Positions 43,080 to 53,835 of a stretch of 64,000 nt of DNA are shown here, piece by piece. Position 1 is the stretch's first letter, and every line of letters starts with the position of its first letter. Location: the NCBI RefSeq assembly GCF_902652985.1, contig NC_047019.1, positions 3,100,001 through 3,164,000 of the forward strand, given 5' to 3'. Origin of the DNA: Pecten maximus (taxonomy: Eukaryota). A program made the translations under genes and the position numbers. The notes beneath the pieces are model-generated. The model saw only the letters and a list, made by a program, of their open reading frames with translations. It made no database searches and was not told the DNA's origin.

Positions 43080-45060
43080 TTTAGATTTTTCAAGTAGTCT
43101 TTCCAATTTGGCCAATTCTCTTCTAAACTGATTGAAAGAGTTGCCTCCCTTACCTCTGGCAATCAATTTCTGATATATGTTTTTAAGGCTACTATGTCAG
43201 GTCATTCTGAAGGCACCTTGATGGTTAAGAGCATCACATTATCAGCTTTCCTATATATGCCAATATCAGCCAAACCAAAAAGAATTTATCTGTTTATTAA
43301 ATTCAAATGTGATAAGCGGATTATTTAACAAATTTTCTAAAAGTTTGCATTTTCTCACAATTCCATAATGTGTGTTCAATTGTTTCAATTCAGTTTTGCA
43401 AATATAACATAAAGGACAAGTGGATAACCTCACTTTAAATAAATCTGAATTTGTCGGCAAAATATGGTGATTAATCCTAAATTGAAACGACTCTAACTTA
43501 GTGTTTTCAGTAACAGAAAGAGGAAAGCTTAAAAAATATCATCCGAATAAAAATGTTTCTCACATTTGTTTACCAATTTTAATTATATCATATTTATAAA
43601 TTATGTCATAGAAATCGTTAGTACTATGTACCTTTCTTGTTTTCATAAAAAATACTCTATTTCTTGGATGGATTTTCTATTTTTGGATGGATCAAGCCAT
43701 GTTGAATGCAATCTTCCTAAATAGCTGTTATAATACCTTGATATTTAAGAAATAATTAACGATGATTCGTGTATTATTGCAGGATATACAACGAGGACGA
43801 GGATATTTTGCAATTTAATTAATAACGAAGGCGGCCTTCGTTATTAATTAAAATTGCAAAATATCCTCGTCCTCGTTGTATATCCTGCAACAATACACGA
43901 GTCAAAGTTGATTATTTCTATTCTACCATGTACTGTTTAGTTCTGAGATCGACCTCTTTCTAATAGAAAAACAGCAAAGAAACCCCGGAAAAACCTCATA
44001 ATTTATTTCTTGAGTATTGTATTATTTGTTGATGAAATATACAGGCAATACAGTACTATGATCAAGAGCATCTATCATATGGCATTGATTTTGAAAATTA
44101 AAAAAAAAAGGGATAAAAAAGAAAAAGAAAAAAGAGGGGCTCCGCAGGATTCGAACTCGCGACGTGATAAAAATATATTGAAAAACTAACTCATTAGCCC
44201 ACTCGGCTATAGTAACCTTTTAAGAAACGGGTGAATATTAGATATTTAAAATTGTAACAGCCGTGACTCGCGACCGTGTATTATTGGCACGAGCGTGGGT
44301 TATTGGAAAATAATACATAGTTTTAAACCAATCAAAACTGGCGTTACATAGCAAACATGGTAGAATGTAAGATAATGTTGGAACACAATATTTTCCTCTG
44401 AAATCCAAAAAATTAAGGAAATTATCAAGTCATTAACTACTACTACTCCCTTTCTGTACCAATTTTTGCATAAAATAAAAAAACAAAAAACAAAAAACAA
44501 AACTTTTCATTATACCATAAAGGCATGTTCGAGATGGATTTTATTCAAGATATTTTTTCTTCTGATTTATCTTTCCAAAACATATTTTGGAGGTTGATAA
44601 TATGTTCCTGAATGGGAGTTTAATGAATCTATAGGTTTTAATTTTTTATAAAAGTGTTATCTGGATTTGGAAGAGAGATAAACAGGTAATTAAACTGAGA
44701 AATCAATAAAGATTTTATCATATTTATCCTTCCTACAGGTGTAAGACTTCTCATATTCTTAATGATTTAAGTTCTACTAGTTTTTTTTAATCAAAATTCA
44801 AGTTTGGGATACGATAGTTCAACATGAAATTCAATTCCAAGAATAGTAAATTTTTGTTTGCCCCTATTGCAAATTCCAGTCTTTAGTCAAAACTTCCTTG
44901 CTATGTTTTTCAATTTCCAATCCAAACTTATTGTGTTTTTCCAAGATTCATTTAAACCGAGATTTAAAAGAATCTTATTCTTTAATTGATTCTTGCAGTG
45001 ATAATTCTGATCCATAAAGAATTAGAGATGTGTCACCAACATACCGAGAAAGTAGAATAG
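43080..45060 (-). mobile_element. LINE fragment (L1/Tx1-group ORF2), pseudogenised and interrupted by an insertion
   Basis: Decayed YADD box (SRYVGDTSLIL, about 45020-45050), FTILGI, LTPVGRINMIKSLLISQFNYLFISLPNP, and zf-RVT-like FRINHHILPTN..CPLCYICK. Confidence 0.8.
43745..44387. mobile_element. Non-autonomous element with a 134-bp palindrome and an internal tRNA-like segment (Crypton-like?)
   Basis: Near-perfect inverted repeat 43767-43900; second IR pair ATTCTACCATGT (about 43920) / ACATGGTAGAAT (about 44375); minus-strand A/B boxes at 44138-44211. Confidence 0.6.
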
Positions 45061-46385
45061 GGCGATCATGTTCAGTTACTTTTACTCATTTTATGTTTTT
45101 GTTATGTTTTAAATTGCTGAAATTTCAGAACAAAGGATAAAGACGAAGGGCGCGATTGGGTCGCCTTGACGACAACCCCTTTTTCTCTCAAAGAATTATG
45201 ATGATTCCCACAATGGTTAATTGTAGAATTAGATGGGGGGTTTTTTTTTTGGTTTTTTTTTTATGTCTGAATCCATTTTTTTATACTTTGCCCAAATTTA
45301 AAAAAATCAAATACTTCATTTATAAATGTCCAAGAAACTGAATCAAATGCGTTCTCAAAAAACTATCGTAAGTAACATTCCTCGTTAGTTAATTTCTTCC
45401 AATAAACTGCATTATATCATTCATGTGACAATTTCCCAAACTGACCAGAAAAAAAACCTCACCGTCATTCAGGAAGCATTATACGTCAGTATTTGACCTA
45501 ATTAGTCATATTTCGTTTTCATGGATGTGGGGACCAATTCCTTTAAAATCTGAGTTCCAAGTCACTTTTGCAGAAATATTTTCAAAATAACATCGTAAAT
45601 CAAATTTTATATACCACTGTATCACAGCAACATAGCTGTCTTAAAGTGGTTCACAAATTATTATCTATAGTTATTTGGCTTTTAGTTACCAGAAAGTGTC
45701 TTTCTCGACTCCATGGGAAGCATACAGCCGGAGCTGCCATTTTGGCGCTAACAGTGTGCACACGGCATTTCTTGCATTGCCCTACCACGTGATCATTTAC
45801 AGCTGGGTTGACTGGAACACAACAGAATAAAGTATCTTGTTCAAGGATACAACACAGCGCCCGTACTGAAAGCATAGCTATAGAAAATTTGTAGAAACAA
45901 TGCAGAAAAAATGAGAGTCACGTACTGTATATAAATTTGATGTTGTTTGTCTATATTATTGTCGGGTGAAAATATGAGGAATTAAAACGTAATGATTATC
46001 TTACTTTTCCCATTACAGCTCGGCAAAAATGGCGGTATTGTAGATTTTATTTGATCACTGTTATATATATTTTTTCTTTTCAGCAACATTAAAGGCAAAA
46101 CTATAAAGTTATCCCCGGTAAAACGAAATGTTTGAGAGTTATATTTTAAAATACATGATTTATACAAAGAATTTTCATTATTTTTATGCAAAGCTATGTC
46201 TAAAACCTTTCCTGAACTTTTGACCGAAACTGTGAAATTATCCTCTGGTTAACCCCGAATATCCCAGTGTAGACAATTCAGAAGTTACGTAACTGATACA
46301 GGTGATTGTTGTGAGGTCATTTTTACCAATAACCGGCCGATATGAAGTAGGACAAGGCCGTCACTGATGTAGGTGATAAGCTCCT

Positions 46386-46399
46386 CTATATATATATAC
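46386..46399 (+). promoter_or_regulatory. Possible TATA box of the oxygenase gene
   Basis: (TA)n run about 70 bp upstream of ATG 46464; could be a simple microsatellite. Confidence 0.35.
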
Positions 46400-46463
46400 T
46401 TGTAATTGCAGAAATGAAATTGATTACAAGGCGCAGACACAGCAGTATCACTCTCCTTTGGTC

Positions 46464-48613
46464 ATGGCGTTAAATGAAGCATTGCTTGTTTTGCTTGTGT
46501 CTGTCTTCCTCCTGGCGGGTACTGCCGAGGCAGATGGTTCAGAGGGCTTTGAAATGTGGTTTACTACTAACACGGTTGAAATGGAAAACAAACCAATCTA
46601 TTTTGATAACCCACTTCCTAAATGGCTCAAAGGAACTCTCGTAAGTATTTATAAATTCATATGATTTTTTATTAACAAACCCTTTATGTTAAACGTCAGA
46701 TTACAAATAATTGTTTTGTAAACGAAAACGTCATATACTATACACATATTACTTGTACATGTCAGTAGCTAAATTTATGTATTCAGTAGACGTATGAAAG
46801 TGCTAGCTCAGATGCTTTGTTTTTAAAGTTAAGAATATCAACCATGCTGTTATCAAATGTGGTTTTAACGTTAAGAATATCAACCATGCGGTTATCAAAT
46901 GATAGCAGATTTTGCAAAATATTTCAATAGTGCAACGGTCGTTTTCGGGTAAAAAAAAATGTATGTATTGGTCGATCCTAATGAAACAGAATGTCGAACT
47001 CTGTACCAATTATTGTCGCTAATCTTGCAGCTGGCGTTGTCGTGTTGGCACCTTGTCCAATACAACAATGCGACAACGCGTCCATGACGAAAATCATTCA
47101 CAATGAACAACTGACTACTGTTGCCATATAATTAAATGTTTCAATTAATTCAAATTAACTTTATTTAAATTTATTAGAATTATGAAACTAAATCTTCATT
47201 TCCCTCTACTGACAGATCAGAAATGGTCCTGGAAAATACGAGATGGGAAGCCGGAAGTTCCTTAATGCACTAGACGGGTATTCCAAGCTCTCCAGTTGGA
47301 CATTCGCTGGAAATGGTTCTGCTTATTTCTCCACCAAATTCCTCAAATCAGACACTTATAAAGATTCTATGTCCAAAGATGACGTAGCACCGTTTCTCAC
47401 GTTTGGCGGGGTCGATCCTCCATTTAACGATGTCCAAAAGGCGGAGGCTGTCGGTCATCAGCTGGACAATATGAACGTTAACGTTTTTAAATTCATGGAT
47501 GATGGCGGACCCGTATTCGCAGCAGTGTCTGATGTTTGGAAACTGTATGAATTCAACGAATCACTGGCTACTTTAAAGGCTGTTGAGGCCAAACATCCGG
47601 AAAAAAACCCCGACGGAAGTATTGGGTTCATTAACTCCATGTCATGCGCACATGCGCTTCCGGAATATGGTACCTCAGATACATACTTCAATTTCTACAG
47701 TAGTTTAAGCTTAATTCCTGGTATTAAACACAAACTAACTCTTGTACGGATTAAATCGGTCAACGATCGACAAGTTGTAGCAGAATGGAACACGGATAAA
47801 GTAGCGTATATGCATTCCTTCTCGGTAACGCCAAATTACGTCATATTTTTCGTCGCCCCTTATTACGTCAACACGGAAAAACTTCTCTTACACGGATCAG
47901 TAGTAAACGGCATGGATTGGTTTTCAAAACAAAATACAACAGTTTATATAGTAAACACAAAATCAGGTCAAATCCACAACATGGATATTGCAAACGTCAT
48001 GGCGTTGCACCATATAAACGCGTTTGAATTCACCGACGGTAAAATCGCTGTAGATGTTGCGGGTCATAACAACCCGTTCTTTTCAAACGCTTTTGAGATG
48101 TCGACCATTCACAATATTACAGCACGCGCCAACAGCAAATATAAAACTTTGGTAACCAGGTACATTTTTGATATACAGAGAAACACTTACCTGAAACAAA
48201 ATTTCCAAGATTCTGATAAATATCTGTGTGCCTCGAAACTAGAAATACCGACAATTAACGAACATTACCGATCAAAGTCGTATTGCTTTGTGTATGGGGC
48301 AGTCTACAATTTTGACGGAAAAGATTTTGCTCATATAGCGATCGTCAAGAAGGACGTGTGTGGTCAAAAGAGAGACAAGGCGCTATACATCCCTAACCAC
48401 TACCCTACCGAGGCTTGGTTCATACCTTCACCGCCAGGTGTCGCTACGTCAGAGGACGATGGTTACTTGGCATCAATATTCCTCGACGGAACAACGAAAA
48501 CGAGTTATATCGCTCTGATTGACCCCAAAACCATGACAATTACCAATAAAGCCGTACTTCCAACGGTTGTTCCTTTTGATATCCACGGACGTTTCTTTCC
48601 TGACGTTGTATAA
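46464..48613 (+). CDS. Carotenoid cleavage oxygenase (RPE65/BCO superfamily, BCO-like) with predicted signal peptide; 2 exons, about 524 aa
   Basis: Exons 46464-46640 and 47216-48613 join as LPKWLKGTL|IRNGPGKYE. Four Fe-ligand His motifs SCAH, YMHSF, HHINAFE, DIHGRF; also LEIPTIN, YPTEAWF and SEDDGYL. AATAAA at about 48712. Confidence 0.95.
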
Positions 48614-49203
48614 TTAATCTACTAATTGAAAATTAGCTTTCATGTATTTCTGTAAATTTTATTTCGCGAGACTGTATTATTTATTATTTATGTCATTATT
48701 ATGAATATGTTAATAAAAAACAAAAAATATTTGTCAATTAGTTTTGGAGTTCTTAATTGTTCATTGTTTCAAGTACATAATTAATGTGATTAATACAACT
48801 CTATTCTATACAAAATCATATATATATAAAAATTTAAAAAAAAACTTCAAAATTTCATGTTTGTCCCAAATTCTATGAATAACGTTGTTGCTCGCCGCGT
48901 GCTTACTGTCTAGTGAATCAGTCCGTTTTAATGAAAAGTTTTAAGATTTTTTAATTGTCACACTTGTCACAATTGAAAATGAACCAAATTTCATTGGCAT
49001 TTTAAATCGTGATTTGTCCTGGTTCAAGTTGCACGGCATATCATCTAACTGTGCAAGATATTGTAAGCGCACACATTTTAGCGGCAAGCTTATTTAAGCG
49101 GGGTTTTTTTTCGCGCTTAAACATTTGGCTAATTAATGATCGCGCTAATTACACTTAATTCATATCACTTTCTGCTGCAAATATTTGGATGCGCTAATCT
49201 ATA

Positions 49204-49760
49204 AGGTGACTGATTTGTGCCATTTCGTCCTTTCGTCTCTTCACCCCGAAAAGACACGAACACGAACATACCGCAGCCTCCCGGGATACACATACGCACT
49301 CACCACACGTATGCATGTCGCACGCACGGGAGGCCGTCCTTAAATGACTTAGCTGTTAATATGACGTTAATCAAAATAAACCCCGAAAAGACGAAAATTA
49401 ACCAAACTTATATTGCGTCTTTTCTACTTTTCGCCCCGAAAGTAACCAATTTTCGTCTTTTCGGGGCGAAAGACGAAATTTTAAAACCTTAATTTTCGTC
49501 TTTTCGCCCCGGGGAGAAAAGTCGAAAAGATGAAAATTAAGGTTTGTTAATTTTTGTCTTTTCGGGGTGAAATGTCGAAAAGACGAAAAGAATGAACCCG
49601 AAAATACGAGAAATAAAGTCGTTAATTTGCGTGCATTTATTTTGTCTTTTCGAGTATGATGTTTCGTCTTTTCACCCAGAAAAGACGTAATTTAGATTTT
49701 GTTAATTTTGTCTTTTTGGGGCGAAAGACAAAAGGACGAAATGGCACAAATCAGCCACCG
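49204..49760. mobile_element. MITE with TA duplication and internal TTTCGTCTTTTCG subrepeats
   Basis: TA|AGGTGACTGATTTGTGCCATTTCGTCCTTT ... AAAGGACGAAATGGCACAAATCAGCCACCG|TA. Confidence 0.85.
49256..49379 (+). mobile_element. 5'-truncated retroposon sharing the SINE-A 3' tail
   Basis: 13-bp target site duplication ACCCCGAAAAGAC (49243-49255, 49380-49392); tail GTCCTTAAATGAC..GCTGTTAATA.GACGTTAA. Confidence 0.8.
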
Positions 49761-49901
49761 TAAATTCGATTATGCGCTGTTTGAGTTTGCCAAATTGAGT
49801 ACGGCTACAACAATTGGTGCTGATTTTTTTTCTGGGAGTTTTGGGAGACGATATAATTTGACATATTACGTCACCGGCGCTGACTATACGACTGTTTTTA
49901 A

Positions 49902-53660: not shown

Positions 53661-53835
53661 NNNNNNNNNNNNNNNNNNNNNNNNNNNNNNNNNNNNNNNN
53701 NNNNNNNNNNNNNNNNNNNNNNNNNNNNNNNNNNNNNNNNNNNNNNNNNNNNNNNNNNNNNNNNNNNNNNNNNNNNNNNNNNNNNNNNNNNNNNNNNNNN
53801 NNNNNNNNNNNNNNNNNNNNNNNNNNNNNNNNNNN
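53661..53835. other. Assembly gap
   Basis: Run of N. Confidence 1.

What the first reader, a model, noticed from the sequence alone, without database searches (positions are those of the whole stretch)
46464..48613. Carotenoid-cleavage oxygenase with a secretory signal peptide and N-glycosylation sequons
Seen: the N-terminus MALNEALLVLLVSVFLLAGTAEA|DG has a hydrophobic core and an A-x-A cleavage site. There are four sequons (NGS, NES, NTT, NIT), no obvious C-terminal anchor or KDEL, and all four iron His retained. The PDPCK-type motif is replaced by VDPPF, HWFDG by NALDG, and one second-shell Glu position appears to be Asp (AVSDV). Known: BCO1, RPE65 and NinaB act on the cytosolic side and BCO2 in mitochondria. 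Inference: a secreted or lysosomal Fe(II) oxygenase of an invertebrate BCO-like clade, possibly cleaving dietary algal carotenoids or other alkenes outside the cytosol, with possible relevance to tissue or shell colour.
Basis: partly seen in the sequence, partly recalled or inferred. Interest (0 to 1): 0.78.

Follow-up and report, generated by a model that had tools for sequence, protein, structure and literature searches.

The report
Scallop secreted-type carotenoid oxygenase (BCOL)
This is an ordinary, already annotated king-scallop gene of the BCO-like (BCOL) carotenoid-cleaving enzymes, whose signal peptide, sugar-attachment sites, VDPPF motif and Glu-to-Asp change were published as family hallmarks in 2017 to 2026.

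Summary
A two-exon gene (46464-46640 and 47216-48613, + strand) encodes a 524-aa RPE65/CCD-family protein. It is identical to an NCBI Pecten maximus protein, and RNA contigs from two studies confirm the intron.

- **N-terminus:** MALNEALLVLLVSVFLLAGTAEA|DG has a 16-residue uncharged core and an AxA site. It is the only hydrophobic segment in the protein.
- **Catalytic residues:** all four iron His are present (H205, H259, H324, H516). The second shell is D165, E402, E458.
- **Motifs:** VDPPF replaces PDPCK.
- **Disulfide:** the two Cys that form the disulfide in the secreted lancelet enzyme BCOLg (PDB 9plv, the best sequence match at E 1.6e-79) are conserved.

All of these features are published hallmarks of the BCOL clade. 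Poliakov 2017 tabulated signal peptides for mollusc members. Secretion was shown in 2020, and the glycosylated crystal structure followed in 2026.

The count of four sequons is not above chance (4.66 ± 1.97 expected). Only their conservation carries weight.

The gene belongs to a scallop-specific one-to-one orthogroup, and P. maximus has at least seven intact paralogues of the same gene structure. Substrate, tissue and final destination are untested. The link to colour is speculation.

Nothing like this was noted earlier in this scan. Verdict: real, correctly read, already known; low interest.

The parts
46387..46398 (+). TATA-like run (TATATATATATA) 66-77 bases upstream of the ATG; possible core promoter
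   Evidence: Sequence. Inference only; no transcript 5' end was seen.
46464..46532 (+). Predicted cleavable signal peptide, residues 1-23 (MALNEALLVLLVSVFLLAGTAEA), with an AxA site before D24
   Evidence: A 16-residue uncharged core at 6-21 is the only hydrophobic segment of the protein, and the -3/-1 rule is met at A21/A23. The AF2 model shows a detached helix at 2-18, then pLDDT below 50 at 19-21. Orthologues keep a hydrophobic leader although its sequence diverges. No SignalP-type predictor was available.
46464..46640 (+). Exon 1: start codon (context GGTCATGG), signal peptide and the first 36 mature residues (DGSEGFEMWFTTN...KWLKGTL)
   Evidence: Identical to residues 1-59 of P0001. The last 41-50 bases are joined to exon 2 in RNA contigs.
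46641..47215 (+). Intron, 575 bases, GT..AG, phase 0, placed just before the IRNGPG motif
   Evidence: The joint 46640->47216 is seen in contigs of runs X1 and X2 (two studies), and depth across 46771-47092 is zero. Paralogues share this intron position: the Pfam match starts at profile position 30 in all of them.
47216..48613 (+). Exon 2: the rest of the seven-bladed CCD propeller (residues 60-524) and the stop codon
   Evidence: Pfam RPE65 PF03055, E 2.1e-57. PDB 9plv BCOLg, E 1.6e-79. AF2 model pLDDT 91.8 and pTM 0.89. Foldseek best match is NdCCD 6vcf, TM 0.90.
47411..47425 (+). VDPPF motif, in place of the palmitoylated PDPCK of canonical metazoan CCDs
   Evidence: Identical to the motif in BCOLg (PMC13734108). 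V-x-P-P-F variants dominate in the family alignment.
47531..47533 (+). D165, a second-shell residue at the position of RPE65 Glu148 and BCOLg Asp167
   Evidence: Alignment to 9plv. Asp in 83 of 83 BCOL-like relatives.
47651..47653 (+). H205, iron ligand 1 (SCAH)
   Evidence: Aligned to BCOLg His210. Invariant, 83/83.
47813..47815 (+). H259, iron ligand 2 (YMHSF)
   Evidence: Aligned to BCOLg His263. Invariant, 83/83.
48008..48010 (+). H324, iron ligand 3 (first His of LHHINAFE)
   Evidence: Aligned to BCOLg His328. Invariant, 83/83.
48242..48244 (+). E402, a second-shell residue at the position of RPE65 Glu417 and BCOLg Asp408; here it is still Glu
   Evidence: In the family this position is Asp in 58, Glu in 24 and Leu in 1 of 83.
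48284..48286 (+). C416, predicted disulfide partner 1 (SYCFVYG), equivalent to BCOLg Cys422
   Evidence: Alignment combined with the disulfide Cys422-Cys449 reported in PMC13734108. Cys in 82 of 83.
48359..48361 (+). C441, predicted disulfide partner 2 (KKDVCGQ), equivalent to BCOLg Cys449
   Evidence: Cys in 81 of 83.
48410..48412 (+). E458, a second-shell Glu at the position of RPE65 Glu469
   Evidence: Invariant, 83/83.
48584..48586 (+). H516, iron ligand 4 (DIHGRFF)
   Evidence: His in 82 of 83, with one gap.
47312..47320 (+). Sequon N92-G-S, the best conserved N-glycosylation candidate
   Evidence: A sequon sits in the same column in 68 of 83 relatives and in all four scallop orthologues. 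It lies four residues from BCOLg's glycosylated Asn98 in the alignment.
48113..48121 (+). Sequon N359-I-T
   Evidence: A sequon in the same column in 36 of 83 relatives and in all four orthologues.
47933..47941 (+). Sequon N299-T-T
   Evidence: A sequon in the same column in 21 of 83 relatives and in all four orthologues.
47555..47563 (+). Sequon N173-E-S, poorly conserved
   Evidence: A sequon in the same column in 8 of 83 relatives and lost in the Ylistrum orthologue, which has DQS.

Best explanation
This is a Pecten maximus member of the BCO-like (BCOL) clade of carotenoid cleavage dioxygenases.

Exon 1 supplies a cleavable N-terminal signal peptide (residues 1-23) that takes the nascent chain into the ER. 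There the Cys416-Cys441 disulfide forms and conserved sequons (N92 above all) are probably glycosylated. The mature protein of about 500 residues is a soluble seven-bladed propeller. It holds Fe(II) through H205, H259, H324 and H516, which are braced by D165, E402 and E458.

The protein has no PDPCK palmitoylation motif, no membrane anchor and no ER-retention signal. It is therefore expected to leave the cell or reach an endo-lysosomal or digestive compartment, and there to cleave a carotenoid or apocarotenoid double bond with O2, as lancelet BCOLg does with beta-carotene.

- **Shown here:** gene model, splice, family membership, and conservation of the catalytic, disulfide and leader features.
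- **Inferred by homology:** secretion, glycosylation and carotenoid cleavage.
- **Unknown:** substrate, tissue and final compartment.
For: - The gene model equals NCBI protein P0001 exactly, and the splice joint is seen in RNA contigs of two studies.
- Pfam RPE65 E 2.1e-57.
- The best PDB sequence match is the secreted BCOLg 9plv at E 1.6e-79. This compares with NdCCD at 7e-38 and with NinaB, BCMO and RPE65 at 1e-16 to 3e-21.
- The tree puts it in a Pectinidae orthogroup (support 100) inside the mollusc, nemertean and lancelet clade (support 97), apart from the distant CCDs.
- All four His are invariant, D165 is found in 83/83, and the disulfide Cys pair in 81-82/83.
- The N-terminus is the only hydrophobic segment, is too short for an anchor at 16 residues, and ends in an AxA site.
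- A hydrophobic leader is present in 32-34 of 46 full-length relatives. It is also present in the genomic frame of a paralogue whose annotated model lacks it.
- The AF2 model has pLDDT 91.8, with a detached N-terminal helix.
- Literature: TargetP signal peptides for mollusc BCOLs (PMC5643517); BCOLg secreted from HEK293F and not palmitoylated (PMC7221588); BCOLg glycosylated, disulfide-bonded, E->D, VDPPF, and cleaving beta-carotene to retinal (PMC13734108).
Against: - No signal-peptide predictor could be run.
- The n-region has no Lys or Arg and carries Glu5.
- The RNA contigs do not cover the ATG or the leader, so a different 5' exon cannot be excluded from reads.
- The sequon count is at chance level.
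- Secretion, glycosylation and activity have been shown only for a lancelet relative that is 36% identical.
- Bivalve digestion is largely intracellular, so 'extracellular' is not implied by an ER signal.
- The nonpolar surface patch listed for BCOLg is partly replaced by charged residues here. By the alignment, the positions of L133 and I284 are D and E. Substrate capture may therefore differ.
Confidence: 0.85

Rival explanations
1. The protein enters the ER but is not released from the cell. It ends up in the endo-lysosomal or digestive-vacuole system of digestive-gland cells, or in secretory granules, and meets carotenoids from phagocytosed algae there.
For: A signal peptide shows only ER entry. 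There is no anchor and no KDEL, which fits both secretion and lysosomal sorting. Conserved N-glycan sites could carry sorting glycans. From general knowledge, bivalve digestion is largely intracellular.
Against: The one tested relative, BCOLg, is found in culture medium (PMC7221588, PMC13734108). No lysosomal sorting motif can be read from the sequence. The tissue is unknown because run labels were coded.
Confidence: 0.25
2. The hydrophobic N-terminus is not used. Translation starts at a downstream Met (M32, M40 or M68), or an alternative first exon replaces the leader, giving a cytosolic enzyme like BCO1.
For: RNA contigs reach only about 46591. One P. maximus paralogue (P0041) is annotated with a non-hydrophobic first exon.
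Against: - ATG 46464 is the first in-frame ATG after a stop and has a good context, G at -3 and G at +4.
- The NCBI model uses it.
- The leader is kept hydrophobic in all four orthologues although its sequence diverges.
- The conserved disulfide pair and the invariant loss of PDPCK fit a secretory protein.
- Even in P0041 the genomic frame encodes a leader directly upstream.
Confidence: 0.05
3. The leader is a mitochondrial transit peptide or an uncleaved signal anchor. The enzyme would then be organellar or membrane-tethered, like BCO2.
For: BCO2 has an N-terminal targeting extension. One Crassostrea BCOL scored as mitochondrial in TargetP (PMC5643517 Table 1).
Against: Residues 1-25 contain no Arg or Lys, carry two Glu and one Asp, and are not amphipathic. 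The hydrophobic run of 16 residues is shorter than a typical anchor and is followed by small residues at -3 and -1. Most mollusc BCOLs score as secretory.
Confidence: 0.03
4. It is a secreted CCD-fold enzyme whose real substrate is not a C40 carotenoid. It could be an apocarotenoid, a stilbenoid or another alkene, or the protein could be a binding protein with weak catalysis.
For: - The closest non-BCOL relative by sequence and fold is the archaeal NdCCD, which was crystallised with an apocarotenoid.
- The orthogroup sits on a long stem branch of 0.41.
- The nonpolar patch residues differ from BCOLg.
- The HxFDG motif is NALDG here.
Against: The catalytic His and second-shell residues are intact and under family-wide conservation. 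Tested lancelet BCOLs cleave beta-carotene or lycopene (PMC5643517, PMC13734108).
Confidence: 0.15

Closest known systems
Lancelet BCOLg (Branchiostoma floridae XP_002601288.1; PDB 9plv; Uppal et al. 2026 preprint PMC13734108; Poliakov et al. 2017 PMC5643517)
   Same: - Best sequence match: E 1.6e-79, about 36% identity, colinear over the whole propeller.
- N-terminal signal peptide of about 22-23 residues.
- An identical VDPPF motif in place of PDPCK.
- Asp at the Glu148-equivalent second-shell position.
- Both Cys of the Cys422-Cys449 disulfide.
- Four sequons.
- All four iron His.
   Different: - The Glu417-equivalent position is still Glu (E402) here, while BCOLg has Asp408.
- The sequons are at different positions, though N92 lies 4 residues from BCOLg N98.
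- Nonpolar patch residues L133, Y134, L137, L140 and I284 are D, V, A, V and E here.
- Secretion, glycosylation and 15,15' cleavage were shown for BCOLg and not for the scallop protein.
Mollusc BCOL proteins listed in Poliakov 2017, Table 1 (Crassostrea, Aplysia, Octopus, Lottia)
   Same: The same clade. The Lottia hit P0035 has the 522-aa length of the listed Lottia BCOL, is 44% identical to the query, and groups with it in the tree. The lengths are similar at about 510-540 aa, and TargetP calls a secretory signal in most.
   Different: The window protein belongs to a scallop-specific expansion (12 rows, support 99) and to a 1:1:1:1 Pectinidae orthogroup that was not in the 2017 data set. None of the mollusc members has been tested biochemically in the papers I could read.
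Canonical metazoan CCDs: BCO1, BCO2, RPE65, NinaB (including scallop PyBCO2, PMC11012205)
   Same: Seven-bladed propeller, four-His Fe(II) centre and Pfam RPE65 membership. Foldseek TM is 0.77-0.79 to NinaB and RPE65.
   Different: - Only about 20-22% identical, with E-values of 1e-16 to 3e-21.
- The canonical enzymes have PDPCK with a palmitoylated Cys, three second-shell Glu, no signal peptide, and cytosolic or mitochondrial location.
- They are encoded by many exons: PyBCO2 has 12, and the two multi-exon P. maximus genes on C16 match this pattern. The window gene has two.
Nitrosotalea devanaterra CCD (NdCCD, PDB 6vcf)
   Same: Second-best sequence hit at E 7e-38 and the best structural hit in the Foldseek library at TM 0.90. 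This fits the published placement of archaeal CCDs next to BCOL.
   Different: It is a prokaryotic cytosolic enzyme with no signal peptide. It has HWFDG and DPC-type motifs, and it lacks the disulfide pair.
PyBCO-like 1 of the Yesso scallop (causal gene of orange adductor muscle in 'Haida golden scallop'; cited in PMC11012205)
   Same: A scallop CCD homologue tied genetically to carotenoid coloration.
   Different: I could not obtain its sequence or accession from the papers held. Whether it is the orthologue P0004, another BCOL paralogue, or not a BCOL at all remains unknown.

Membership tests
Carotenoid cleavage dioxygenase superfamily (Pfam RPE65, PF03055) | Significant match to the family profile over the whole domain | tested here: met
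   195.7 bits against a cut-off of 27, E 2.1e-57, covering profile positions 45-469 from exon 2 alone. In the genome search the match is 207 bits.
Carotenoid cleavage dioxygenase superfamily (Pfam RPE65, PF03055) | Four iron-binding His | tested here: met
   H205, H259, H324 and H516 align to BCOLg His210, 263, 328 and 522. They are invariant in 82-83 of 83 relatives.
Carotenoid cleavage dioxygenase superfamily (Pfam RPE65, PF03055) | Seven-bladed beta-propeller fold | tested here: met
   AF2 model with pLDDT 91.8 and pTM 0.89. Foldseek TM is 0.90 to NdCCD and 0.77-0.85 to NinaB, RPE65 and ACO.
Carotenoid cleavage dioxygenase superfamily (Pfam RPE65, PF03055) | Fe(II)- and O2-dependent cleavage of a C=C bond | not testable with these tools
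   This needs recombinant enzyme and HPLC assays.
BCO-like (BCOL) clade (Poliakov 2017; Uppal 2026) | Phylogenetic placement with lancelet and mollusc BCOLs, apart from canonical BCO/RPE65/NinaB | tested here: met
   The closest solved protein is BCOLg, by 40 or more orders of magnitude over canonical CCDs. In the tree, a clade of mollusc, nemertean and Branchiostoma sequences has support 97 against the distant CCDs. Caveat: vertebrate BCO1, BCO2 and RPE65 sequences were not in my tree, because no referenced copies were at hand.
BCO-like (BCOL) clade (Poliakov 2017; Uppal 2026) | No PDPCK palmitoylation motif; V-x-P-P-F instead | tested here: met
   VDPPF at residues 125-129, identical to BCOLg.
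BCO-like (BCOL) clade (Poliakov 2017; Uppal 2026) | Glu-to-Asp replacement in the second coordination shell | tested here: met
   D165 is Asp in 83/83 relatives. The second replacement seen in BCOLg (Asp408) is not present here: E402 is Glu, as in 24 of 83 relatives.
BCO-like (BCOL) clade (Poliakov 2017; Uppal 2026) | N-terminal secretory signal peptide | tested here: inconclusive
   Rule-based features are all met: a 16-residue h-region, AxA at -3/-1, no other hydrophobic segment, and a detached helix in the model. The leader is conserved in orthologues. However, no trained predictor and no experiment were available, and reads do not cover the leader.
BCO-like (BCOL) clade (Poliakov 2017; Uppal 2026) | Intramolecular disulfide (BCOLg Cys422-Cys449) | tested here: met
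   C416 and C441 align to both Cys. They are conserved in 82 and 81 of 83 relatives. Actual bond formation was not testable.
BCO-like (BCOL) clade (Poliakov 2017; Uppal 2026) | N-linked glycosylation and secretion of the protein | not testable with these tools
   Four sequons are present but at the chance count. The N92 sequon is conserved in 68/83. Confirmation needs PNGase F treatment and a secretion assay.
Canonical BCO1/BCO2/RPE65/NinaB | PDPCK motif, three second-shell Glu, no signal peptide | tested here: not met
   VDPPF, D165 and a hydrophobic leader are found instead. The NCBI name 'beta,beta-carotene 15,15'-dioxygenase-like' is a similarity label and not an orthology call.

The most novel reading that the evidence does not exclude
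The window gene is the P. maximus member of a Pectinidae-only orthogroup that sits on a long stem branch. It keeps Glu at the position where most BCOLs have Asp, and it has lost much of BCOLg's nonpolar patch. It could be a neofunctionalised secreted enzyme that acts on scallop-typical xanthophylls (pectenolone, pectenoxanthin or fucoxanthin derivatives) in gut lumen or haemolymph, and so sets how much pigment reaches muscle, gonad or shell. It might even be the orthologue of the colour gene PyBCO-like 1.
Probability: 0.1. Interest if true: 0.5.

Novelty: already known. Interest (0 to 1): 0.15.

Why it matters
The finding has little value as a discovery. The protein is already annotated. The set of features that looked surprising (signal peptide, sequons, VDPPF, Glu to Asp) is the published definition of the BCOL clade, and a crystal structure of a secreted member now exists.

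Its residual value is practical:
- It adds a well-supported mollusc BCOL with a clean two-exon gene model.
- It shows family-wide conservation of the disulfide pair and of the N92 sequon across 83 relatives.
- It documents that scallops carry at least seven such genes. These are candidates for studies of carotenoid handling and flesh colour in aquaculture species.

Tried and rejected
- **Sequon count as evidence: rejected.** Four were observed against 4.66 ± 1.97 expected from composition.
- **Second copy or tandem duplicate in the window: none.** tblastn of both exons against the window found only the gene itself.
- **Rfam and tRNA scans** around the gene and over the whole window found nothing.
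- **Foldseek against PDB did not return BCOLg.** That library stops at April 2026, so the sequence search was used for that comparison.
- **Tissue of expression: not obtainable.** Run, sample and study names were coded and the libraries were mostly unlabelled.
- **5' end from reads: not obtainable.** Logan contigs stop about 50 bases into exon 1.
- **Orthology to PyBCO-like 1: not resolvable.** The original paper is not in the library, and citing papers give no accession.
- **Earlier notes of this scan:** none concern this gene or any carotenoid oxygenase.
- The exons were searched by reference. The full-length steps (alignment, tree, fold) used P0001, the database protein that a search returned and that proved identical to the joined model. 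The identity check was a string comparison inside a script.
- **Not used:** the large representative-protein search, the atlas search and complex prediction, because the family assignment was already unambiguous.
Full report
**What is in the sequence**

The finding's span holds one gene on the + strand.
- An ORF opens at ATG 46464 (context GGTCATGG) and runs to a GTAAGT donor after 46640.
- A CTGACAG acceptor ends at 47215, and the frame continues from 47216 to the TAA at 48611-48613.
- The intron is phase 0 and lies just before the IRNGPG motif that starts the conserved core of carotenoid cleavage dioxygenases.
- The two exons give 59 + 465 = 524 residues.

A word search with exon 2 alone returned a 524-aa NCBI protein, 'beta,beta-carotene 15,15'-dioxygenase-like [Pecten maximus]' (P0001). 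It is letter-for-letter the same as exon 1 plus exon 2. The window is Pecten maximus contig C5:3100001-3164000.

I sent no hand-joined sequence to any search tool. Exons were searched by reference, and full-length steps used P0001.

**Transcript evidence**

I laid contigs of four public runs of this species on 45000-49800.
- Two runs from two different studies carry the joint 46640->47216 (GT..AG, 575 bases skipped), with 50 and 41 bases on the exon 1 side.
- Exon 2 is tiled by contigs, and the intron interior has no depth.

The splice is therefore real and the gene is transcribed. The contigs stop near 46591, so reads do not show the start codon or the leader. Tissue labels were coded.

A TATA-like run at 46387-46398 would place a start site after the only nearby out-of-frame ATG at 46414. 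This is inference only.

- **N-terminus.** It reads MALNEALLVLLVSVFLLAGTAEA|DGSEGFEMWFTTN. Residues 6-21 form a 16-residue uncharged run. A21 and A23 satisfy the -3/-1 rule. This is the only segment in the protein with a Kyte-Doolittle 19-residue mean above 1.6. The C-terminus, HGRFFPDVV, has no KDEL-type signal.
- **Sequons.** They are at N92 (NGS), N173 (NES), N299 (NTT) and N359 (NIT).
- **Named motifs.** VDPPF is at 125-129, NALDG is at 76-80, and AVSDV contains D165.
- **Catalytic residues.** Alignment to solved structures puts H205, H259, H324 and H516 on the four iron ligands. D165, E402 and E458 fall on the three second-shell positions, which are Glu148, Glu417 and Glu469 in RPE65.

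One correction applies: four sequons is not more than chance. Shuffling the mature sequence gives 4.66 ± 1.97, P(>=4) = 0.71.

**What family it belongs to**

- Pfam scores exon 2 at 195.7 bits for RPE65.
- Against PDB sequences the best hit by far is 9plv, 'Beta-carotene oxygenase like g (BCOLg)', at E 1.6e-79. Next is the archaeal NdCCD at 7e-38. NinaB, nematode BCMO, ACO and RPE65 follow at 1e-16 to 3e-21.
- An AlphaFold2 model built on 38 relatives is confident (pLDDT 91.8, pTM 0.89). It shows an N-terminal helix at 2-18 followed by a stretch with pLDDT below 50 at 19-21, which is how a detached leader usually appears.
- Foldseek's PDB copy predates 9plv. It returns NdCCD (TM 0.90), then NinaB, RPE65 and ACO.
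- In a maximum-likelihood tree of 54 proteins, the window protein falls in a four-member orthogroup with one protein each from P. maximus, Argopecten irradians, Ylistrum balloti and Mizuhopecten yessoensis (support 100).
- That orthogroup lies inside a scallop-specific expansion (12 rows, support 99). The expansion lies inside a clade of mollusc, nemertean and Branchiostoma proteins (support 97) that is separate from the distant CCDs.

**Family-wide conservation**

I aligned 83 BCOL-like relatives.
- The four His are invariant.
- Asp at position 165 is found in 83/83.
- Position 402 is Asp in 58 and Glu in 24.
- Glu458 is found in 83/83.
- The motif column is dominated by V-x-P-P-F.
- C416 and C441 are conserved in 82 and 81 of 83.

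These two Cys align exactly to Cys422 and Cys449 of BCOLg. The crystal structure shows that pair to be disulfide-bonded and calls it a mark of a native secreted protein. In my view it is the best sequence-level support for a life outside the cytosol.

The N92 sequon is kept in the same column in 68/83. N359 is kept in 36/83, N299 in 21/83 and N173 in 8/83. All but N173 are kept in all four scallop orthologues.

**The leader in relatives**

The four orthologues share a conserved mature start, GFE-x-WFTTN. It is preceded by 27-32 residues that differ in sequence but always contain a strongly hydrophobic run after the Met. This is the usual pattern for signal peptides.

Of 46 relatives with a full-length N-terminus, 32-34 have such a run. 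Some of the exceptions are probably annotation problems. The P. maximus paralogue P0041 is modelled with a polar first exon. However, the genomic frame directly upstream of its residue 23 reads MSPSIFYILLITTICWTGVDLCLR, which is homologous to the leaders of its orthologues.

**Genome context**

P. maximus has at least seven intact genes in which the Pfam match starts at profile position 30 in one long open exon. This is the same intron position as in the window gene. They lie on C5, C11 (three in tandem) and C15.

There is also a split copy, a stop-ridden pseudogene at C5:29718445-29719180, and two multi-exon canonical CCD genes on C16. The canonical scallop BCO2 has 12 exons and a PDPCK motif (PMC11012205). 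That makes a clear contrast with the two-exon BCOL genes.

**Comparison with what is known**

- Poliakov et al. 2017 (PMC5643517) defined the BCOL clade from lancelet, nematode and mollusc sequences. They noted the missing PDPCK motif. Their Table 1 lists TargetP secretory calls for Crassostrea, Aplysia, Octopus and Lottia proteins of 509-553 aa.
- Uppal et al. 2020 (PMC7221588) showed that BCOLg is not palmitoylated and is partly secreted from HEK293F cells. They refer to 'the secreted BCOL subfamily'.
- The October 2026 preprint (PMC13734108) reports the 2.4 Å structure. It describes a signal peptide at 1-22, four N-glycans, the Cys422-Cys449 disulfide, Asp at two of the three second-shell Glu positions ('a general feature of BCOL proteins'), VDPPF in place of PDPCK, expression in gut, and symmetric cleavage of beta-carotene to retinal.

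Its premise that all known animal CCDs are cytosolic or mitochondrial was out of date.

**How it most likely works**

- **Shown:** gene model, splice, family placement, and an intact and conserved catalytic centre, disulfide pair and leader.
- **Inferred from BCOLg:** co-translational entry into the ER, leader cleavage near A23|D24, disulfide formation, glycosylation (N92 the most likely site), export as a soluble enzyme, and Fe(II)/O2-dependent cleavage of a carotenoid double bond.
- **Unknown:** substrate and regiospecificity, tissue, and whether the end point is extracellular (gut lumen, haemolymph) or endo-lysosomal. The second is a live option in a bivalve whose digestion is largely intracellular.

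There are small differences from BCOLg. E402 stays Glu. By the alignment, BCOLg's nonpolar patch residues L133, Y134, L137, L140 and I284 are D, V, A, V and E here. The scallop enzyme may therefore be even less membrane-seeking.

**Colour**

A scallop CCD homologue, PyBCO-like 1, is reported as the causal gene for orange adductor muscle in the Yesso scallop (cited in PMC11012205). I could not get its sequence or accession from the papers held. No link to the window gene can be made.

**Verdict**

The feature is a routine member of a described, structurally characterised enzyme clade and is already in public annotation. Interest is low. The scan's earlier notes contain nothing on this gene.

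Noticed in passing
window 48611-48625: RNA contigs of two runs (X1, X3) carry a 14-base insertion, AATTAATCTACTAA, right behind 48611. It is a tandem duplication of the bases that follow. It starts inside the stop codon but regenerates TAA, so the protein is unchanged. This is probably an indel polymorphism in the 3' UTR.
   Followed up: partly
window 45805-45965 and 49186-49507: Both short stretches flanking the gene have very high summed contig depth in all four runs (up to about 380). Many different contigs run off into unlike sequence on both sides. This is the behaviour of transcribed interspersed repeats, not of parts of this gene. There were no tRNA or Rfam matches.
   Followed up: partly
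G000:C15:9572100-9575100 (L005 2306-2384, minus strand): The P. maximus BCOL paralogue P0041 is annotated with a polar first exon. The genomic frame directly upstream of its residue 23 encodes a signal-peptide-like MSPSIFYILLITTICWTGVDLCLR, homologous to the leaders of its orthologues. Either the model is wrong, or the gene has alternative first exons giving forms with and without a leader.
   Followed up: partly
G000:C5:29718445-29719180: This is a BCOL-like pseudogene fragment with several in-frame stops. It lies about 18 kb upstream of an intact paralogue at C5:29736693-29738051. Three intact paralogues lie in tandem on C11:22.37-22.44 Mb.
   Followed up: no
window 46414-46473: An out-of-frame upstream ATG opens a 19-codon uORF that ends at a TAA overlapping codons 3-4 of the main ORF. 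It would matter only if transcription starts upstream of 46414. The TATA-like run at 46387-46398 suggests that it may not.
   Followed up: no
window 53661-53835: A run of 175 N, either an assembly gap or masked.
   Followed up: no
proteins P0098, P0101, P0105 (distant CCDs): Some distant CCD homologues from metagenome sources are only about 26-27% identical and lie outside the BCOL clade, yet they also start with signal-peptide-like hydrophobic N-termini. Secretory CCDs may therefore not be confined to BCOL.
   Followed up: no
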